The notes below the pieces were generated by a model that ran no database searches, was not told the origin of the DNA, and was given only the letters and a program-made list of their open reading frames with translations. This document shows positions 7,054-36,074 of a stretch of 64,000 nt of DNA, in pieces. The translations under genes and the position numbers were made by a program. The stretch's first letter is position 1. The number at the start of each line of letters is the position of its first letter. Location: sequence record MZ574431.2. The stretch is one strand, 5' to 3'.

Positions 7054-7600
7054 AACGCCGCCACAGCCTTTATTTGCTGGTGATCAACACCGGCCCCTGG
7101 TGATCCTCCAGGCGCCGGCCGATTTCCTGCGCTGGGACATCCACCGCGCCGCCATCCTGCGCATGATGCGCCGTGACCATGGCGTCAAGGCCAAGGACGT
7201 TCACGCCATCGAAGGCCTCGCCGGCTCGCCCTACGGCGCCGACGATGACCGCGAGGCCCTGGGCAAGCTCAAGGAAACCTTCGCGGGCCTGCGCCACGGC
7301 TTCGCCGCCTTCCACCTCTACACCTGGGACGGCAAGGACTATCAGCCCTTGCGCGAGCCCCTGACGCGCCCGCAAGGCCTTGTTCGCCTCCTAGGCCCCT
7401 ATCCGCCGCCGAGCGGCGTCTATGGGCCGCACGCGCGCAAGACCGCCTCCCACGTCTATCAGGTCTTCAACGCCGATGGCGTCAAGCTGGTGGGCGGCTC
7501 GTTCGGCCCCGATCCTGACGCGGCCCTGGCCTATGCCCGCGCCCAAGCCGCCGCCAAGGGCTACCCTGACCCGGCGGTCGAGATCGTCACCCCGAATTAA
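7050..7600 (+). pseudogene. hypothetical protein split by an apparent 1-nt deletion in the C-run at 7094-7097
   Basis: ATG 7050 frame stops at 7101-7103; one extra C gives continuous MKRRHSLYLLVINTGPLVILQAPADF...EIVTPN. Confidence 0.6.
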
Positions 7601-7685
7601 ATGCAAGAAAACTGTTGACAGCCTTTCGGGGCCATGCGAGAACAAGGCTCAAGACGAGACAAGAGACAGCCAAGAGGAGGACATC

Positions 7686-7694
7686 ATGAAGTAG
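7686..7694 (+). CDS. Met-Lys-stop minigene
   Basis: AGGAGG-ACATC-ATG AAG TAG directly after promoter 7615; twin at 33972-33980 (-). Confidence 0.55.
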   Translation: MK

Positions 7695-7715
7695 CGACAA
7701 TCTGGAGCACACCTC

Positions 7716-8174
7716 ATGAATGTATTCGTCCGCGACGATCTTTTTCAAACCGATCTCGACGAGTGTGGTGACCCGCTTCTGGGTCGCGTCTTCTACGTCG
7801 TTGTCGAGGATCAGAACGGCGCCCGCATCGCCCACGATCGTTGTTTCTACGATCACCGGCGCGTCACCGATGAGGATGGCTTCGCCTTCTGGCAAGCCCT
7901 CTCTTACGAAGACGTCGCCGCCGAGGAAGCCAAGGCGAAAGCCCTGGCCGCCAAGATCGAGAGCCATCTGGCGCGGGGCGGCGCCCTGGACCCCGAGCAC
8001 TGGCGAGACATCGACCCGTGCTATGGCTCCAAGGCCTATGCCGATCTCGACCGGTTCGGCTACTTCCTGGCCAAGGAACGGGCCGCCGACCGCGATCGAG
8101 GCGAGAACGTCCCTGACAGCCCTTGGGACGGCATCGCCGCCATGGTCGATGGCCCCAACTGGTTCGACCGCTGA
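7716..8174 (+). CDS. hypothetical early protein
   Basis: GGAG SD; 152 aa. Confidence 0.8.
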   Translation: MNVFVRDDLFQTDLDECGDPLLGRVFYVVVEDQNGARIAHDRCFYDHRRVTDEDGFAFWQALSYEDVAAEEAKAKALAAKIESHLARGGALDPEHWRDIDPCYGSKAYADLDRFGYFLAKERAADRDRGENVPDSPWDGIAAMVDGPNWFDR

Positions 8175-16871: not shown

Positions 16872-17036
16872 GGCCCTGGCCCGCCCTGACCCGGCGGGCC
16901 TTTCTTTCGCCGATCGCCGTTAACCCTAACCGCCCGTTAGGGTTAACGCCAAAGAAACTACAAGAAAGCTGTTGACACGCATAGCGGCCCTATGCGAGAA
17001 CGTCCCTGCCGCATTGGCGGCCTGGAGACCTATGCC

Positions 17037-17615
17037 ATGACCCGCGATTTCGTTCCGCACGTCATCACCGCCCGCACCATCGACGGCGCCTGCTATTTCA
17101 TCGGCGGCCAGACCTATGGCGATCACCTGGGCCACGCCCGCGTCATGACCAAGGACGACGCCGAACGCCGCGTCGGCGCCCTCCAGCGCCTGGAGCGCGC
17201 CAGCGCCGAGACCCGCCGCGCCAACGACCCCCATGAGGACGACTTTTCGGGCGTCTATGGGCTCGCCGTCGTGGCCACGACCTGGGAAGCCCTGGACAAG
17301 GCCGCCGAGGCGGTCAAGACCTGGGAAGAGGCCGACCTTGCCGCCGAGGAGGCTCACGACGCCCTTTATGACGACTATGACCCGAACGAGGGCATGAGCG
17401 CCGAGGAGATCGCCGCCGAAAGCGCGTGGTGGCGCGAGCAGATGGCCAAGGACCAGCCTTTCGCCCCTGGCCAGTCGGTGACCATCACCGATGAGCTTCA
17501 CCCCGACCACGGCGCCAGCGCCCGCGTCGTCGAAGCCGAGCAATCGGGCTATCTGGTGCTTGCCCTGGGCGAGCGCCTGACCTGGGGCTTGGCCAAGGGC
17601 GTGGCCGCCGCCTAA
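17037..17615 (+). CDS. hypothetical early protein
   Basis: GGAG SD after promoter 16972. Confidence 0.8.
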   Translation: MTRDFVPHVITARTIDGACYFIGGQTYGDHLGHARVMTKDDAERRVGALQRLERASAETRRANDPHEDDFSGVYGLAVVATTWEALDKAAEAVKTWEEADLAAEEAHDALYDDYDPNEGMSAEEIAAESAWWREQMAKDQPFAPGQSVTITDELHPDHGASARVVEAEQSGYLVLALGERLTWGLAKGVAAA

Positions 17616-30724: not shown

Positions 30725-30758
30725 CACCTACGGCGTCACCATGTCACTGTCAACAGCA
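30725..30758 (-). promoter_or_regulatory. internal leftward promoter
   Basis: Minus strand GCTGTTGACA (TTGACA 30753-30748) followed by GTGACATGG. Confidence 0.5.
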
Positions 30759-33094: not shown

Positions 33095-33850
33095 TCAGCC
33101 CCCGTTGGCGATCTGCGACGCCAGCTTGCCGTCGAAACGGCCGGCATGATGCGTCTTCAGGTACGCCATGATCTCGCCGATCTTGGCGTCGGCCTTGGCC
33201 GCCTTGAACGCAGCGATCACGCCACGCAGTTCGTCCTCGGTCAGCGGCGTCGGCGCGGCCGGCAGATAAGTGCCCAGGAGCGCGGCTTCCATCAGCGCCT
33301 TTTCGGCGCCGGCCTTGTCGCCGCGCTTCTCCAGGGCGATGGCCGAGGCCTGCGCGCCCTTGTAGAAGTTGCGCACGACCTCGATCACCTCCTCGTCGGT
33401 CGGGTCTTCCTTGGCCTTCTGGGCCAGATCATACAGCGCCTGCTCCAGACGACCCAGCGGCCAGCCCTCGGCTTCGGCCTGCTGCTCGGCGGCGGCGATC
33501 GCGCTGCCCTCCATGGCGGCGAACTCGTCGTTGACGACGTTGATGGCGTCAAGCACCACCTGCTCGCCCCGGCCGGCATAGTCGGCCTGCACCTTTTCCA
33601 GGGCGGCGGCGCGCAGCGGCTTGAAGAAGGCGATCGTGTCCTTGCGGGCTTGTTCGAGTTGACCCAGCGGCCACTTCTCGACCTCGGCCTGCTTGCGGAT
33701 GGGCTTGGCGCCCTCATTGTACTTGGTCGCCGCGACCGAGTTGGTCAGTTCCGAAAGCAGCAGCGACAGCAGCGTGGCCTCGGCCACCCGCGCGGGTTTT
33801 TCGGACTTGGCGCTGGCGAGGTCGGCGCGGATTACATTGATGAGGCTCAT
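33095..33850 (-). CDS. GatB/YqeY-domain protein with internal insertion
   Basis: TDEEVIEVVRNFYK, E..LL.TYLP..LTEDEL, IGEIMAYLK..GRFDGK.AS match YqeY. Confidence 0.75.
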   Translation of the reverse strand: MSLINVIRADLASAKSEKPARVAEATLLSLLLSELTNSVAATKYNEGAKPIRKQAEVEKWPLGQLEQARKDTIAFFKPLRAAALEKVQADYAGRGEQVVLDAINVVNDEFAAMEGSAIAAAEQQAEAEGWPLGRLEQALYDLAQKAKEDPTDEEVIEVVRNFYKGAQASAIALEKRGDKAGAEKALMEAALLGTYLPAAPTPLTEDELRGVIAAFKAAKADAKIGEIMAYLKTHHAGRFDGKLASQIANGG

Positions 33851-33971
33851 GAAAACTCCCGATTGCGGGACGCAGTAGGCCCCAACTTAAAATAGAATAC
33901 GCGCGCCGCCTTCATCATTCTCGGCGGCGCGCTGGCTCTGATCGGCCGGATTGGCTCCGGTGGGCGAAAGA

Positions 33972-33980
33972 CTACTTCAT
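33972..33980 (-). CDS. Met-Lys-stop minigene
   Basis: Minus strand AGGAGG-CGGTC-ATG AAG TAG, first start signal after the leftward promoter. Confidence 0.55.
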   Translation of the reverse strand: MK

Positions 33981-34049
33981 GACCGCCTCCTGGGTGGCTC
34001 TGTAGCCGCGCCCTCGTCGTTATGGAGCGCAGCCTGGATCAAGATGACG

Positions 34050-34084
34050 GAACCTCTACCGATCCGAGCAGGGTGTCAACAGAA
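34050..34084 (-). promoter_or_regulatory. leftward promoter for the 25-34 kb operon
   Basis: Minus strand CTGTTGACA (TTGACA 34079-34074), back to back with the portal promoter. Confidence 0.6.
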
Positions 34085-34092
34085 AAATCGCG

Positions 34093-34130
34093 GTGACGTA
34101 ATTCTTGACACGTGTCGTTAACCATGTCAC
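34093..34130 (+). promoter_or_regulatory. late-type promoter upstream of portal
   Basis: GTGACGTAATTCTTGACA-CGTGTCGTTAACCATGTCA; related motifs at 51020, 53935, 57484. Confidence 0.7.
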
Positions 34131-34265
34131 ACCGGCCTCACGGTCGAGCCGCATCCCGCGACCCGATCGTTCTTTCGTCATCGGCCTTGGGCGGGGCCAG
34201 TAAAGCCGGATCAGCATGCCGGCCTGAATACCCCGCCTCTTTTTTCAGACCGCGAACCGACCAAT

Positions 34266-36074
34266 ATGGCTGGCCAATCCGCCAACTCCGTCAATATCGA
34301 ACGCGTCTCGCGCGCCGTGTCCAACACGACGAACGCGATCGTCCACCCGGAGTACCAGTATTGGCTGCCCGACTGGGTCAAGCTACGCGACACCCTGGCT
34401 GGCCAGCGCGTCGTCAAGTCCAAGGGCGAGGCCTACCTGCCCCGGAACCTCGGCGCTGAAGCCCTGGAATACAAGGCCTATCTCGACGGCGCAATCTTCT
34501 TCAACATGGTCGATCAGACCCTGAACGGCATGACCGGTCAGGTCTTCCGGCGCGCGCCGGTGATCCGCAACCTGCCCGAAAAGCTCCAGGACAAGATCAT
34601 CCACCTGGGCCAGGACGGCTCCAGCCATGTCGCCTTCACCAAGACCGTCGTGCGCGAAGTCTGCGCCATGGGCCGCTACGGCGTCCTTGTCGACGCGCCC
34701 AAGACCTCCGGCGACAGCTACGCCGTCGGCTACCGCGCCGAGGACATCCTGGACTGGACCATCGAGAGCATCGGTGGCGTCCAGCGTCTGACCCGCGTGC
34801 TGCTGCGTGAATTCAAGCGCGTCCAATCGACCCTGACCGGCCGCGCCAAGGTGCGCAGCGGCGGCCAGACCTACCAGTACGAGACCGTCTACCGCGAACT
34901 GGTCCTGGAATTCGTCGACGGCCGCTGGACCTACTTCCAGAACATCTACGACAAGGGCGGCCCCCAGGGCGTGCCGACCGACATCATCCGTCCGGTCATC
35001 AACGGCAACCCGCTGACGGCGATCCCGTTCGTCTTCTTCGGCCCGACGGGCAACACGCCCGACTGCGAAAAGCCGCCGCTGATCGACATCGCCGAACTGA
35101 ACCTGTCGCACTACGAAGACTATGCCGACTTCCAGCACGGCAAGAAGTACACCTCCCTGCCGATCTACGTCGTGCCGGGCGGCAGCGAAGGCGGCGCCGA
35201 CGAGTACAAGATCGGTCCCAACACCATTTGGGAAGTGCCGATCAACTCCAAGCCCGAAATCCTGGAGTACAAGGGTGACGGCCTGAAGACCCAGGCCAAC
35301 GCCCTGTCGACCAAGGAGCGCCAGATCGCCGCGATCGGCGGCCGGCTGCTGCCGGGCATGGGGCAGGGCATCTCGGAGTCGAGCGAGCAGGCGACCATGC
35401 GCGGCGCCTCCGAGCAGTCGATCCTGCTCAACGTCATCCTGTCCGTCCAGGACGGCATGTCGCTGGTCCTGCGCTACTGGGCCGCGTGGCGCGACGTGCC
35501 CATGGCCACCACCGCCCAGGTCCGCTACGTCATCAATTCCAACTTCCTGGTCGGTCACGTCGACGCCCGCGTGCTGCGCGCCCTACAGATGCTGTGGGAA
35601 GCCGGCCTCGTGCCGATCGAGGTGCTGTTCGACAACCTGCGCGACCTGGAGGTCCTGTCCGACGACTGGACCCTGGAGATGTTCATCGAGCGCATGCAGG
35701 ACCCGACCGCCTTCGTCAACAACCCCGACGCCCAGGCCAAGACGCGCGGCTACGCCAGCCGCAAGCAGGAACTGGACGAGGCCGCCCGCAAGATCGAGCA
35801 AGGCCAGCAGGACCGCGCCCTGGACATCCAGGAAGAGAGCATCGACGGCCTGGACGACGGCGACGTGCTGCGCAAGCGCGAGGACCAGCAGATGGACTTC
35901 GAGCGCCAGCAGCACGAGGACCAGATGCAGTTCCAGTACGACAAGCTGGCCTCCGACGAGGCCCTGGCCAAGCAGAAACTGGCGACCCAGAAGGCGATCG
36001 CGGCCAAGGCCGCCCAACGCCCGGCCGTCCCGGCGCAACAACCCAGCCGGCCGCCGGCCGGTGGTCAAACCTAA
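34266..36074 (+). CDS. portal protein (DUF4055-type)
   Basis: 602 aa; HPEY..W..W..RD..AG...VK..GE.YLP, Y..Y...A.F.N....TL.GM.G.VFRR, IPFVF, PPL.DIA.LN.SHY motifs. Confidence 0.85.
   Translation: MAGQSANSVNIERVSRAVSNTTNAIVHPEYQYWLPDWVKLRDTLAGQRVVKSKGEAYLPRNLGAEALEYKAYLDGAIFFNMVDQTLNGMTGQVFRRAPVIRNLPEKLQDKIIHLGQDGSSHVAFTKTVVREVCAMGRYGVLVDAPKTSGDSYAVGYRAEDILDWTIESIGGVQRLTRVLLREFKRVQSTLTGRAKVRSGGQTYQYETVYRELVLEFVDGRWTYFQNIYDKGGPQGVPTDIIRPVINGNPLTAIPFVFFGPTGNTPDCEKPPLIDIAELNLSHYEDYADFQHGKKYTSLPIYVVPGGSEGGADEYKIGPNTIWEVPINSKPEILEYKGDGLKTQANALSTKERQIAAIGGRLLPGMGQGISESSEQATMRGASEQSILLNVILSVQDGMSLVLRYWAAWRDVPMATTAQVRYVINSNFLVGHVDARVLRALQMLWEAGLVPIEVLFDNLRDLEVLSDDWTLEMFIERMQDPTAFVNNPDAQAKTRGYASRKQELDEAARKIEQGQQDRALDIQEESIDGLDDGDVLRKREDQQMDFERQQHEDQMQFQYDKLASDEALAKQKLATQKAIAAKAAQRPAVPAQQPSRPPAGGQT

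What the first reader, a model, noticed from the sequence alone, without database searches (positions are those of the whole stretch)
7675..7694. Two identical SD-ATG-AAG-TAG (Met-Lys-stop) minigenes, each first behind a promoter
AGGAGG-ACATC-ATGAAGTAG at 7675-7694 (+) and AGGAGG-CGGTC-ATGAAGTAG at 33991-33972 (-): same strong SD, same 5-nt spacing, same three codons, 26 kb apart on opposite strands. Established: lambda bar minigenes cause peptidyl-tRNA drop-off and tRNA sequestration. Inference: a tRNA-Lys/ribosome sink or a translational sensor. The first is in frame with gene 7716, so amber readthrough would extend it by 10 codons.
Basis: partly seen in the sequence, partly recalled or inferred. 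Interest (0 to 1): 0.75.

Follow-up and report, generated by a model that had tools for sequence, protein, structure and literature searches.

The report
Conserved two-codon leader minigenes in phage
A giant Caulobacter phage carries two tiny "genes" of only Met-Lys-stop behind very strong ribosome-binding sites. Related phages keep them carefully, even swapping one stop codon for another, so they are almost certainly translated control elements in mRNA leaders rather than chance strings.

Summary
The window is bases 1-64000 of Caulobacter phage J4 (Bertelyvirus, 312 kb). AGGAGG-N5-ATG-AAG-TAG occurs at 7675-7694 (+) and 33991-33972 (-). In the 287.6 kb unique genome these are the only intergenic, sense-oriented minigenes with a full AGGAGG.

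Both are under selection. At site A, CcrBL9 and CcrSC keep the SD, the 5-nt spacing, ATG-AAG-TAG and 20 of the next 21 nt up to the gp015 start. The gp015 protein is only 38-44% identical and the surrounding leader about 45%. At site B the SD, spacing and ATG-AAG are invariant, but the stop is TAG, TAA or TGA in different lineages.

Site A lies in the leader of one member of a family of about 22 early promoters. Site B is followed by a conserved hairpin and a constitutive intrinsic terminator, then a YqeY-like gene.

Best reading: cis-acting ribosome-loading mini-cistrons, like the EHEC LEE1 and axe-txe two-codon minigenes.

A lambda-bar-like tRNA-Lys sink is not supported. AAG is the abundant Lys codon, and the downstream context and geometry are conserved. 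It is not excluded.

Amber read-through is unlikely.

This is a new member of a known kind. Function is untested.

The parts
7612..7643 (+). Early promoter upstream of site A: -35 CTGTTGACA (7612-7620), 14-nt spacer, -10 GCGAGAAC (7636-7643). The inferred TSS is near 7650.
   Evidence: It is one of about 22 near-identical promoters in the terminal repeat. It fits the Caulobacter sigma-73 consensus TTGACgS-N10-14-GCtANAWC (own knowledge). The -35 and -10 blocks are 14-16 of 16-18 identical in CcrBL9/CcrSC. The TSS has not been mapped.
7675..7680 (+). Shine-Dalgarno AGGAGG of minigene A
   Evidence: It is 6/6 conserved in CcrBL9/CcrSC, while the 27 nt before it are 11-13/27 identical. Only about a dozen of roughly 490 J4 genes have a full AGGAGG (with the annotation).
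7686..7694 (+). Minigene A: ATG AAG TAG (Met-Lys-stop)
   Evidence: It is 9/9 conserved in CcrBL9 and CcrSC. The 50 nt around it are identical in all 7 J4-group phages. It is intact in a wastewater contig.
7695..7715 (+). 21-nt intercistronic block containing the gp015 SD (GGAG, 7704-7707). It lies 9 nt after the minigene stop and 8 nt before ATG 7716.
   Evidence: 20/21 identical in CcrBL9/CcrSC, although the first 45 nt of gp015 are only about 50% identical.
7716..8174 (+). gp015, a 152-aa early protein of unknown function; the gene downstream of minigene A
   Evidence: Annotation. Homologues in CcrBL9 (44%), CcrSC (38%) and distant jumbo phages align from residue 1. No Pfam family; phrog_1507, unknown function.
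34074..34082 (-). Putative -35 (CTGTTGACA) of the site B promoter; the -10 is not identified
   Evidence: TTGACA is conserved in CcrBL9/CcrSC. It resembles the other minus-strand promoter at 30756-30748. This is a prediction only.
33986..33991 (-). Shine-Dalgarno AGGAGG of minigene B
   Evidence: It is 6/6 conserved, while the 82 nt upstream are 32-33/82 identical.
33972..33980 (-). Minigene B: ATG AAG TAG
   Evidence: ATG-AAG is invariant. The stop is TAG in J4/RB23/BL47, TAA in C1/C2/CcrC3/CcrBL1 and TGA in CcrBL9/CcrSC.
33941..33968 (-). Conserved block after minigene B with a small hairpin (CCGGA 33960-33956 pairs with TCCGG 33950-33946; the loop is variable)
   Evidence: 15/15 and 10/10 identity in CcrBL9/CcrSC, with a divergent loop between.
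33889..33932 (-). Intrinsic terminator: 10-bp GC stem (33932-33923 / 33910-33901) followed by a U-rich tail (33900-33889)
   Evidence: The hairpin is kept in CcrBL9/CcrSC with a compensatory pair. It is predicted to form with or without a ribosome on the minigene.
33095..33850 (-). gp071c, first gene of the leftward operon (to about 25106); it has a C-terminal YqeY/GatB-like domain
   Evidence: PF09424, E=1.8e-11. phrog_1460 'tRNA amidotransferase', E=2.7e-24. Annotation.

Best explanation
Both elements are genuinely translated two-codon (fMet-Lys) leader mini-cistrons that selection maintains. They act in cis as high-affinity ribosome-loading sites near the 5' ends of two phage transcripts.

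Site A. A ribosome recruited by the perfect SD translates Met-Lys and terminates at 7692-7694. At that point its footprint already reaches the gp015 SD, which lies 9 nt downstream. The ribosome is therefore either handed on to the gp015 start 21 nt away (termination-reinitiation coupling) or gates access to it. Either way, the minigene sets the translation rate of gp015, and probably the stability of its mRNA.

Site B. The same device sits in a structured leader (5' hairpin, minigene, small conserved hairpin, constitutive terminator) ahead of the leftward operon, which starts with a YqeY-like gene. There it most likely keeps a ribosome on the leader, protecting the RNA or preventing premature termination. 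It does not control the terminator hairpin directly.

Shown: the sequence, its uniqueness in the genome, its conservation pattern and its context. Inferred: that it is translated, that it acts in cis, and the direction of the effect.
For: 1. ORF-type conservation at two non-homologous loci. The SD is 6/6 conserved, the spacer length is fixed at 5 nt while its sequence is free (1-2/5 identical), ATG-AAG is invariant, and a stop always follows. The flanking leader is only 39-48% identical.
2. Stop-codon turnover at B (TAG, TAA by a 1-nt insertion, TGA) preserves the two-codon length.
3. At A the 21 nt linking the minigene stop to the gp015 ATG are 20/21 conserved and in frame. The gp015 protein has diverged to 38-44% identity.
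4. In about 20 sibling early promoters the first SD-ATG after the promoter is the gene itself, roughly 25-30 nt from the -10. Leader A carries about 45 extra nt that hold the minigene.
5. These are the only intergenic sense sites of this kind in the 287.6 kb unique genome. Their SD is stronger than that of about 97% of the phage's genes.
6. There are experimental precedents for cis-acting two-codon leader minigenes whose effect depends on distance: axe-txe mg2 (15 nt from txe, in frame, no effect in trans, not toxic) and EHEC LEE1. A strong-RBS mini-ORF also protects LEE4 mRNA from RNase E (PMC8708949).
7. Closely spaced upstream and main RBS pairs act by coupling or occlusion in the alphaproteobacterium Sinorhizobium meliloti (PMC13285730).
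Against: There are no expression data of any kind. The TSSs, translation at either ATG, and the cis effect are all inferred.

The predicted RNA structure of leader A is no better than shuffled sequence (z = -0.2 to -0.7). The hairpin joining the two TCATGA start regions rests on one compensatory change only.

At B the minigene is 127 nt and a full terminator away from gp071c, so reinitiation cannot apply there. The promoter-minigene-terminator layout looks like a self-contained small RNA, which would fit a trans role as well.

Identical AAG at both loci is not required by a pure ribosome-loading model.

Only three diverged lineages exist, so the statistics are thin.
Confidence: 0.5

Rival explanations
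1. Trans-acting sink, like the lambda bar minigenes. Repeated translation of Met-Lys-stop releases fMet-Lys-tRNA or ties up ribosomes and release factors, depleting host tRNA-Lys(CUU) or translation capacity to the phage's benefit.
For: The two-codon ORF with a maximal SD is the anatomy of toxic minigenes. B is a promoter-5' hairpin-minigene-terminator unit that would yield a stable small RNA whose only ORF is the minigene. The same codon, AAG, is used at both loci in every lineage. The phage supplies its own, structurally odd, CUU-anticodon tRNA and a tmRNA.
Against: AAG is the major Lys codon (93% of Lys codons in 20 genes), so its tRNA is unlikely to be limiting. The phage's own genes depend on that tRNA too. 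The conserved downstream context and the fixed in-frame 21-nt distance at A are not needed for a sink. From my own knowledge, bar toxicity is known only in Pth-deficient hosts. The axe-txe two-codon minigene was neither toxic nor active in trans (PMC8708949). The GenBank annotation names no phage Pth, so no counter-measure is evident; this was not searched for specifically.
Confidence: 0.12
2. Translation-state sensor or attenuator at B. Occupancy of, or stalling on, the Met-Lys-stop ORF reports ribosome, Lys-tRNA or release-factor availability and sets read-through of the downstream terminator into the operon that starts with the YqeY-like (tRNA-binding-type) gene.
For: A leader ORF followed by a conserved intrinsic terminator, and then the operon with no room for another promoter. 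The first gene has a YqeY/GatB-C domain linked to tRNA. A 100% conserved block follows the minigene directly.
Against: No alternative antiterminator pairing was found. The terminator is the MFE element with or without a ribosome footprint in all three lineages. The stop lies 39 nt before the terminator stem, too far for a terminating ribosome to block it. All three stop codons are used, so this is not RF1- or RF2-specific sensing. There is a single Lys codon of the abundant type. The divergent portal leader has its own leader-terminator without a minigene, which suggests factor-dependent antitermination instead.
Confidence: 0.13
3. Programmed amber read-through at A, giving gp015 a 10-residue N-terminal extension driven by the strong SD.
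For: ATG 7686 is in frame with ATG 7716 and no further stop lies between them. TAG is invariant at A in all lineages.
Against: No suppressor tRNA among the tRNA genes ARAGORN reported across bases 1-290,000 of J4. gp015 homologues, including distant ones, align from residue 1 at ATG 7716. gp015 has its own family-typical RBS. The identical minigene at B is out of frame with gp071c and uses any stop codon.
Confidence: 0.03
4. Not a translational element. The shared string would be a protein- or RNA-binding site, or a remnant of decayed gene starts that resembles a minigene by coincidence.
For: At A the conservation is at the nucleotide level over 33 nt, which a binding site would also give. There is no direct evidence of translation.
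Against: At B the nucleotides of the stop change twice, once by an insertion that shifts everything downstream by 1 nt, yet a stop is always kept. The spacer sequence is free while its length is fixed. The conserved parts are exactly SD, start, one codon and stop, at two loci that are otherwise unrelated.
Confidence: 0.08

Closest known systems
Cis-acting two-codon leader minigenes: EHEC LEE1 (upstream of ler) and axe-txe mg2 (PMC8708949)
   Same: A two-codon ORF with a functional SD in the 5' leader. It sits a short fixed distance from the downstream RBS: 15 nt and in frame for mg2, 21 nt and in frame at site A. In the published cases the minigene acts in cis, the effect depends on distance, and it is not toxic.
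   Different: Here the host is a jumbo phage and the codon is AAG. Two convergent copies exist, and the evidence is evolutionary rather than experimental. Site B is far from its gene and is followed by a terminator, an arrangement not described for those systems.
Lambda bar minigenes (barI/barII, AUG-AUA-stop); details from own knowledge and from Hernandez-Sanchez 1998 as cited in PMC2490762
   Same: Phage-borne; two copies with the same single sense codon and differing stop codons; an SD-like sequence upstream; a two-codon length.
   Different: bar uses the rare AUA codon and its effect is seen in Pth-defective hosts. Here the codon is the abundant AAG, the downstream context is conserved, and no toxicity data exist.
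5' mRNA stabilisers that work through ribosome binding: the LEE4 six-codon mini-ORF (cited in PMC8708949), and B. subtilis STAB-SD and the phage SP82 polypurine leader (own knowledge)
   Same: A very strong SD near the 5' end that does not serve the main ORF. At B it is combined with a 5' hairpin.
   Different: STAB-SD elements need no ORF. Here a start, one codon and a stop are all conserved. Stabilisation has not been tested.
Bacterial start-stop sites and upstream-RBS occlusion or coupling (E. coli Ribo-RET, bioRxiv 10.1101/520783; S. meliloti uRBS, PMC13285730)
   Same: Minimal ORFs with an SD that modulate a neighbouring main ORF. At A the two RBSs are closer than one ribosome footprint.
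   Different: Start-stops have no elongation step. Those studied lie inside genes and have small effects.
Leader-peptide transcription attenuators (trpL type)
   Same: At B, a leader ORF is followed by an intrinsic terminator ahead of an operon.
   Different: There is no alternative antiterminator structure. There is one ordinary codon rather than a run of regulatory codons, and the stop is too far from the terminator.

Membership tests
Two-codon leader minigene acting in cis (LEE1 / axe-txe mg2 type) | ORF of start + one sense codon + stop, preceded by a properly spaced SD, inside the 5' leader of the regulated gene | tested here: met
   Both sites have AGGAGG, a 5-nt spacer and ATG-AAG-stop, and lie downstream of promoter motifs and upstream of gp015 / gp071c.
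Two-codon leader minigene acting in cis (LEE1 / axe-txe mg2 type) | Short, functionally constrained distance between the minigene stop and the downstream RBS | tested here: met
   Met at site A only: 9 nt to the SD and 21 nt to the ATG, 20/21 conserved and in frame in three lineages. Not met at site B: 127 nt with a terminator in between, and a 1-nt insertion after the codon is tolerated.
Two-codon leader minigene acting in cis (LEE1 / axe-txe mg2 type) | Minigene mutations change downstream expression in cis and are not complemented in trans | not testable with these tools
   Needs reporter fusions in C. crescentus.
Lambda bar-type toxic minigene (tRNA sequestration by peptidyl-tRNA drop-off) | Two-codon ORF with an SD on a phage transcript | tested here: met
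   Transcription itself is only predicted.
Lambda bar-type toxic minigene (tRNA sequestration by peptidyl-tRNA drop-off) | The last sense codon is read by a scarce tRNA, so that sequestration starves the cell (AUA in bar) | tested here: not met
   AAG accounts for 211 of 227 Lys codons in 20 J4 genes. The phage also encodes a CUU-anticodon tRNA.
Lambda bar-type toxic minigene (tRNA sequestration by peptidyl-tRNA drop-off) | Growth inhibition and peptidyl-tRNA accumulation when Pth is limiting | not testable with these tools
   Needs expression in Pth-depleted C. crescentus.
Leader-peptide transcription attenuator (trpL type) | Leader ORF followed by an intrinsic terminator upstream of the operon | tested here: met
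   Site B only. The terminator at 33932-33889 is conserved with a compensatory pair.
Leader-peptide transcription attenuator (trpL type) | Mutually exclusive antiterminator and terminator structures selected by ribosome position | tested here: not met
   Constrained folding in J4, CcrBL9 and CcrSC keeps the terminator with or without a ribosome footprint on the minigene. The stop is 39 nt from the stem.
5' mRNA stabiliser by ribosome binding (STAB-SD / LEE4 mini-ORF type) | Very strong SD near the 5' end that does not initiate the main ORF | tested here: met
   AGGAGG lies about 25 nt (A) and about 55 nt (B) from the inferred TSSs. Only about a dozen J4 genes have such an SD. The TSSs are not mapped.
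5' mRNA stabiliser by ribosome binding (STAB-SD / LEE4 mini-ORF type) | Longer half-life of the downstream RNA that depends on the SD | not testable with these tools
   Needs rifampicin-chase measurements with and without SD / AUG mutations.

The most novel reading that the evidence does not exclude
The phage makes dedicated 'minigene RNAs'. Site B would be a self-contained promoter-hairpin-minigene-terminator small RNA, and site A is present twice in the terminal repeats. Endless Met-Lys-stop cycles on these RNAs would deliberately reprogramme the host translation apparatus, by trapping host tRNA-Lys(CUU) as fMet-Lys-tRNA or by occupying ribosomes and release factors. The phage would bypass the block with its own unusual long-arm CUU tRNA, its tmRNA and its YqeY-like protein. 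That would be the first adaptive, wild-type role for bar-like minigenes.
Probability: 0.08. Interest if true: 0.85.

Novelty: new member of a known kind. Interest (0 to 1): 0.55.

Why it matters
Two-codon minigenes have been studied in only a handful of cases (lambda bar, LEE1, axe-txe). Almost always there was no evidence that selection maintains them.

Here two unrelated leaders in a jumbo phage have converged on the same SD-N5-AUG-AAG-stop device. Nine genomes show the signature of selection on the ORF itself: fixed spacing, free spacer sequence, and all three stop codons used in turn.

That makes this a clean natural system for asking what a two-codon ORF does in a wild-type context: ribosome hand-over, RBS gating, mRNA protection or tRNA trapping. 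It also flags unannotated regulatory elements that gene callers can never report.

It also adds to the picture of how Caulobacter jumbo phages organise early transcription, with a family of about 22 promoters and leader-terminator units flanking the portal gene.

Tried and rejected
- Wider relatives. No relatives were found beyond the nine sequenced Bertelyviruses, so no deeper comparison was possible. IMG/VR pattern scans returned only CcrBL9 and CcrSC themselves. A metagenome scan with the portal protein found nothing, as did one with a 22-nt conserved string. The 5.8-billion-protein search with gp071c gave only the same phages plus one weak hit.
- Rfam. No family matched 33700-34400.
- Exact motif across IMG/VR. 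There were 98 stretches with TAG and 48 with TGA, one per contig. 33 of the 146 lie outside ORFs of 70 aa or more, but many TGA cases are simply GTG gene starts overlapping the string. I drew no conclusion about a wider phenomenon. My ORF filter is also unreliable in GC-rich DNA.
- Homology between A and B. Beyond the motif the two leaders do not align convincingly, so I treat them as convergent rather than duplicated.
- RNA structure at A. It is not better than shuffles. The TCATGA/TCATGA pairing (CCATGA/TCATGG in CcrBL9/CcrSC) is a single covariation and remains only a lead.
- Attenuator model at B. Rejected by constrained folding.
- Function of gp015. No Pfam family, a PHROG of unknown function, and only low-scoring Atlas leads. 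Distant homologues (Erythrobacter phage XM05, GAP32) show no equivalent leader in their annotation; their upstream DNA was not inspected.
- Transcription evidence. Only wastewater 'RNA-Seq' metagenome contigs exist, and they are probably DNA. One 213-nt contig spans 7577-7787 with the minigene intact, but it starts upstream of the promoter and says nothing about transcripts.
- A phage-encoded peptidyl-tRNA hydrolase was not searched for systematically. None is named in the GenBank annotation.

Full report
IDENTITY OF THE WINDOW

The window is bases 1-64000 of Caulobacter phage J4 (MZ574431.2; Bertelyvirus, Dolichocephalovirinae; 312,338 bp; host C. vibrioides CB15), in the same coordinates. 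Bases 1-24723 are the left copy of the terminal repeat. Site A therefore occurs twice per genome.

OBSERVATION

AGGAGG-ACATC-ATG-AAG-TAG is at 7675-7694 (+) and AGGAGG-CGGTC-ATG-AAG-TAG is at 33991-33972 (-). The ATG at 7686 is 30 nt upstream of, and in frame with, the annotated gp015 start at 7716.

A shared 15-17-nt string in 128 kb of two-stranded sequence is not remarkable in itself. What makes the pair stand out is form and place.
- They are the only two-codon ORFs in the window with an SD of 5 or more bases.
- The 287.6 kb unique genome holds 212 AGGAGG sites. Only these two are intergenic, sense-oriented AGGAGG-N5-ATG-codon-stop.
- Only about a dozen of the roughly 490 genes have a perfect AGGAGG.
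- None of 20 sampled genes has AAG as its second codon.

CONTEXT OF SITE A

The terminal repeat carries a family of about 22 almost identical promoters. Their layout is ..GCAAGAAAG-CTGTTGAC(A/T)-about 14 nt-ATGCGA(C/G)AA.., and it fits the Caulobacter sigma-73 consensus (own knowledge). In almost all of them a short leader follows (..TCATC..GGGAGACACCCC-ATG), so the first SD-ATG is the gene itself.

The promoter at 7612-7643 belongs to this family. Its leader is about 45 nt longer, and the extra stretch holds the minigene. gp015 then has its own family-typical RBS (GGAG at 7704-7707, 8 nt before the ATG).

gp015 is a 152-aa protein of unknown function. It has homologues in CcrBL9, CcrSC and several distant jumbo phages, and all of them align from residue 1.

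CONTEXT OF SITE B

Site B lies in the divergent region between the portal gene (34266, +) and gp071c (33850, -). gp071c heads a leftward operon that runs to about 25106. A conserved TTGACA (34079-34074) is the only clear promoter element.

Downstream of the minigene come, in order:
- a 100% conserved block with a small hairpin (33968-33941);
- a GC-rich intrinsic terminator with a U-rich tail (33932-33889), conserved with a compensatory pair;
- the gp071c RBS.

gp071c has a C-terminal YqeY/GatB-like domain (PF09424, E=1.8e-11; phrog_1460).

CONSERVATION (THE DECISIVE EVIDENCE)

The only relatives anywhere are the seven near-identical J4-group phages and the two diverged species CcrBL9 and CcrSC.

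At site A, J4 compares with CcrBL9/CcrSC as follows.

| Segment | Identity |
|---|---|
| 5' leader | 11-13/27 |
| SD | 6/6 |
| SD-ATG spacer | 2/5, length kept at 5 |
| Minigene | 9/9 |
| 21 nt to the gene ATG | 20/21 |
| First 45 nt of gp015 | about 50% |
| gp015 protein | 38-44% |

At site B:

| Segment | Identity |
|---|---|
| 82 nt of leader | 32-33/82 |
| SD | 6/6 |
| SD-ATG spacer | 1/5, length kept at 5 |
| ATG-AAG | 6/6 |

At B a stop codon is always present but its identity changes. It is TAG in J4, RB23 and BL47. It is TAA in C1, C2, CcrC3 and CcrBL1, produced by a 1-nt insertion that is one of only two differences in 417 nt. It is TGA in CcrBL9 and CcrSC.

This is the pattern expected if the ribosome reads the element: SD, spacing, start, one codon and any stop are kept. 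It is not the pattern of a nucleic-acid binding site.

MECHANISM

I favour cis-acting ribosome loading.

At A the geometry is stop, 9 nt, SD, 8 nt, AUG. The two start codons are only 30 nt apart, which is less than one ribosome footprint. A ribosome on the minigene therefore necessarily interacts with the gp015 initiation region. It either passes on to it after termination or occludes it.

Published two-codon leader minigenes behave this way.
- axe-txe mg2 is in frame, 15 nt upstream of txe. It acts in cis only, is not toxic, and its effect depends on distance.
- In EHEC LEE1 the distance decides the sign of the effect.
- A strong-RBS mini-ORF protects LEE4 mRNA from RNase E (PMC8708949).
- Coupling and RBS occlusion by upstream RBSs have been shown in the alphaproteobacterium S. 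meliloti (PMC13285730).

At B reinitiation is impossible, because 127 nt and a terminator intervene. It is also not a trpL-type attenuator. In J4, CcrBL9 and CcrSC the terminator is predicted to fold with or without a ribosome on the minigene, and the stop lies 39 nt before the stem. I therefore infer that at B the minigene keeps a ribosome on a leader that also has a 5' hairpin. That would protect the RNA from decay or from premature termination. Read-through of the terminator would be controlled separately.

The divergent portal side has its own highly conserved leader that ends in a strong terminator just before the portal ATG. This suggests factor-dependent antitermination on both sides.

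RIVALS

The lambda-bar-like sink is weakened by three points.
- AAG is the abundant Lys codon (211 vs 16 AAA).
- The downstream context is conserved.
- bar has no known wild-type role (own knowledge).

Three observations keep the sink model alive, at about 0.1.
- B has a self-contained small-RNA layout.
- AAG is invariant at both loci.
- The phage encodes a CUU-anticodon tRNA, a tmRNA and a YqeY-like protein.

Amber read-through is unlikely. There is no suppressor tRNA, homologues of gp015 start at Met 7716, and any stop codon serves at B. A non-translational motif is hard to reconcile with the stop-codon turnover.

LIMITS

Nothing here shows transcription or translation. The only public runs holding the sequence are wastewater metagenomic libraries. 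One 213-nt contig covers 7577-7787 with the minigene intact, but it begins upstream of the promoter and is probably DNA. Conservation rests on three diverged lineages.

VERDICT

The element is under selection as a two-codon ORF. It is best filed as a new, well-supported member of the cis-acting leader-minigene kind, and site B has an unusual terminator-linked layout. The specific sink and read-through ideas are not supported. Interest is moderate to high (0.55), because it offers rare evolutionary evidence that two-codon ORFs are maintained, in an experimentally tractable phage-host pair.

Noticed in passing
window 2827-24291 (+), e.g. 5962, 7612, 8289, 9123, 9834, 13291, 15592, 16060, 16969, 18039, 18797, 19648, 20679: A family of about 22 near-identical early promoters fills the terminal repeat. 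Each has GCAAGAAAG-CTGTTGAC(A/T), about 14 nt, then ATGCGA(C/G)AA, and each sits in front of one or a few small genes with a stereotyped leader (TCATC..GGGAGACACCCC-ATG). There were 26 matches to CTGTTGACA with up to 1 mismatch, against 7 expected.
   Followed up: partly
window 34100-34245 (+): A 143-nt non-coding element is 92-94% identical between J4 and CcrBL9/CcrSC, much more than its surroundings. It has a possible TTGACA promoter at 34105 and a structured body. It ends in a strong hairpin plus T6 terminator about 20 nt before the portal ATG. It is a candidate small RNA or antitermination leader for the structural operon. No Rfam match.
   Followed up: partly
L008:27040-27126 (J4 genome 77040-77126, outside the window): The phage's only 'tRNA-Lys' is 87 nt long. 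It has a long variable arm, a Ser-like D-arm, a CUU anticodon and U at the discriminator position. This is a type-II body with a Lys (AAG) anticodon, so which amino acid it carries is an open question. AAG is also the minigene codon.
   Followed up: partly
L009:44533-44965 (J4 genome 144533-144965, outside the window): ARAGORN calls a phage-encoded permuted tmRNA with tag peptide VNASNDNDVVVSTMTSVKLAA. It lies next to two tRNA-Met genes and a tRNA-Cys gene and is not in the GenBank feature table.
   Followed up: no
window 33095-33850 (-): gp071c, annotated as hypothetical, has a C-terminal YqeY/GatB-like domain (PF09424; phrog_1460 'tRNA amidotransferase'). The phage also encodes a CCA-adding enzyme, an RNA ligase and a polynucleotide kinase, so it invests heavily in tRNA biology.
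   Followed up: partly
window 17024-17040 (+): A second kind of two-codon ORF, GGAG-ACCT-ATG-CCA-TGA. Its stop overlaps the annotated gp032 start (ATGA overlap at 17037) and it shares the gp032 SD. It resembles the B. subtilis ycbK arrangement and may be incidental.
   Followed up: no
window 30748-30756 (-) and 34074-34082 (-): The two minus-strand CTGTTGACA promoters share a different downstream element (about 14-15 nt, then GTAG..GT) from the early family. This may be a second promoter class serving the leftward operon.
   Followed up: no
L052 (IMG/VR contig 3300047445_000380) and L092 (3300036861_000916): Unrelated viral contigs carry intergenic AGGAGG-N5-ATGAAGTAG followed 21-30 nt later by the start of the next predicted ORF of 70 aa or more. 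This is the same layout as site A, so the device may recur in other phages.
   Followed up: partly
window 7577-7787: A 213-nt contig from a 2025 wastewater metagenomic 'RNA-Seq' run matches with 2 differences. The one reported is A>G at 7634, in the promoter spacer. J4-like phages therefore occur in wastewater with the minigene unchanged.
   Followed up: yes
window 7422-7694 (+): A mechanical 90-aa ORF ends at the minigene's TAG. It overlaps gp014 in another frame and crosses the promoter. CcrBL9/CcrSC have a different upstream gene. I judge it spurious.
   Followed up: partly
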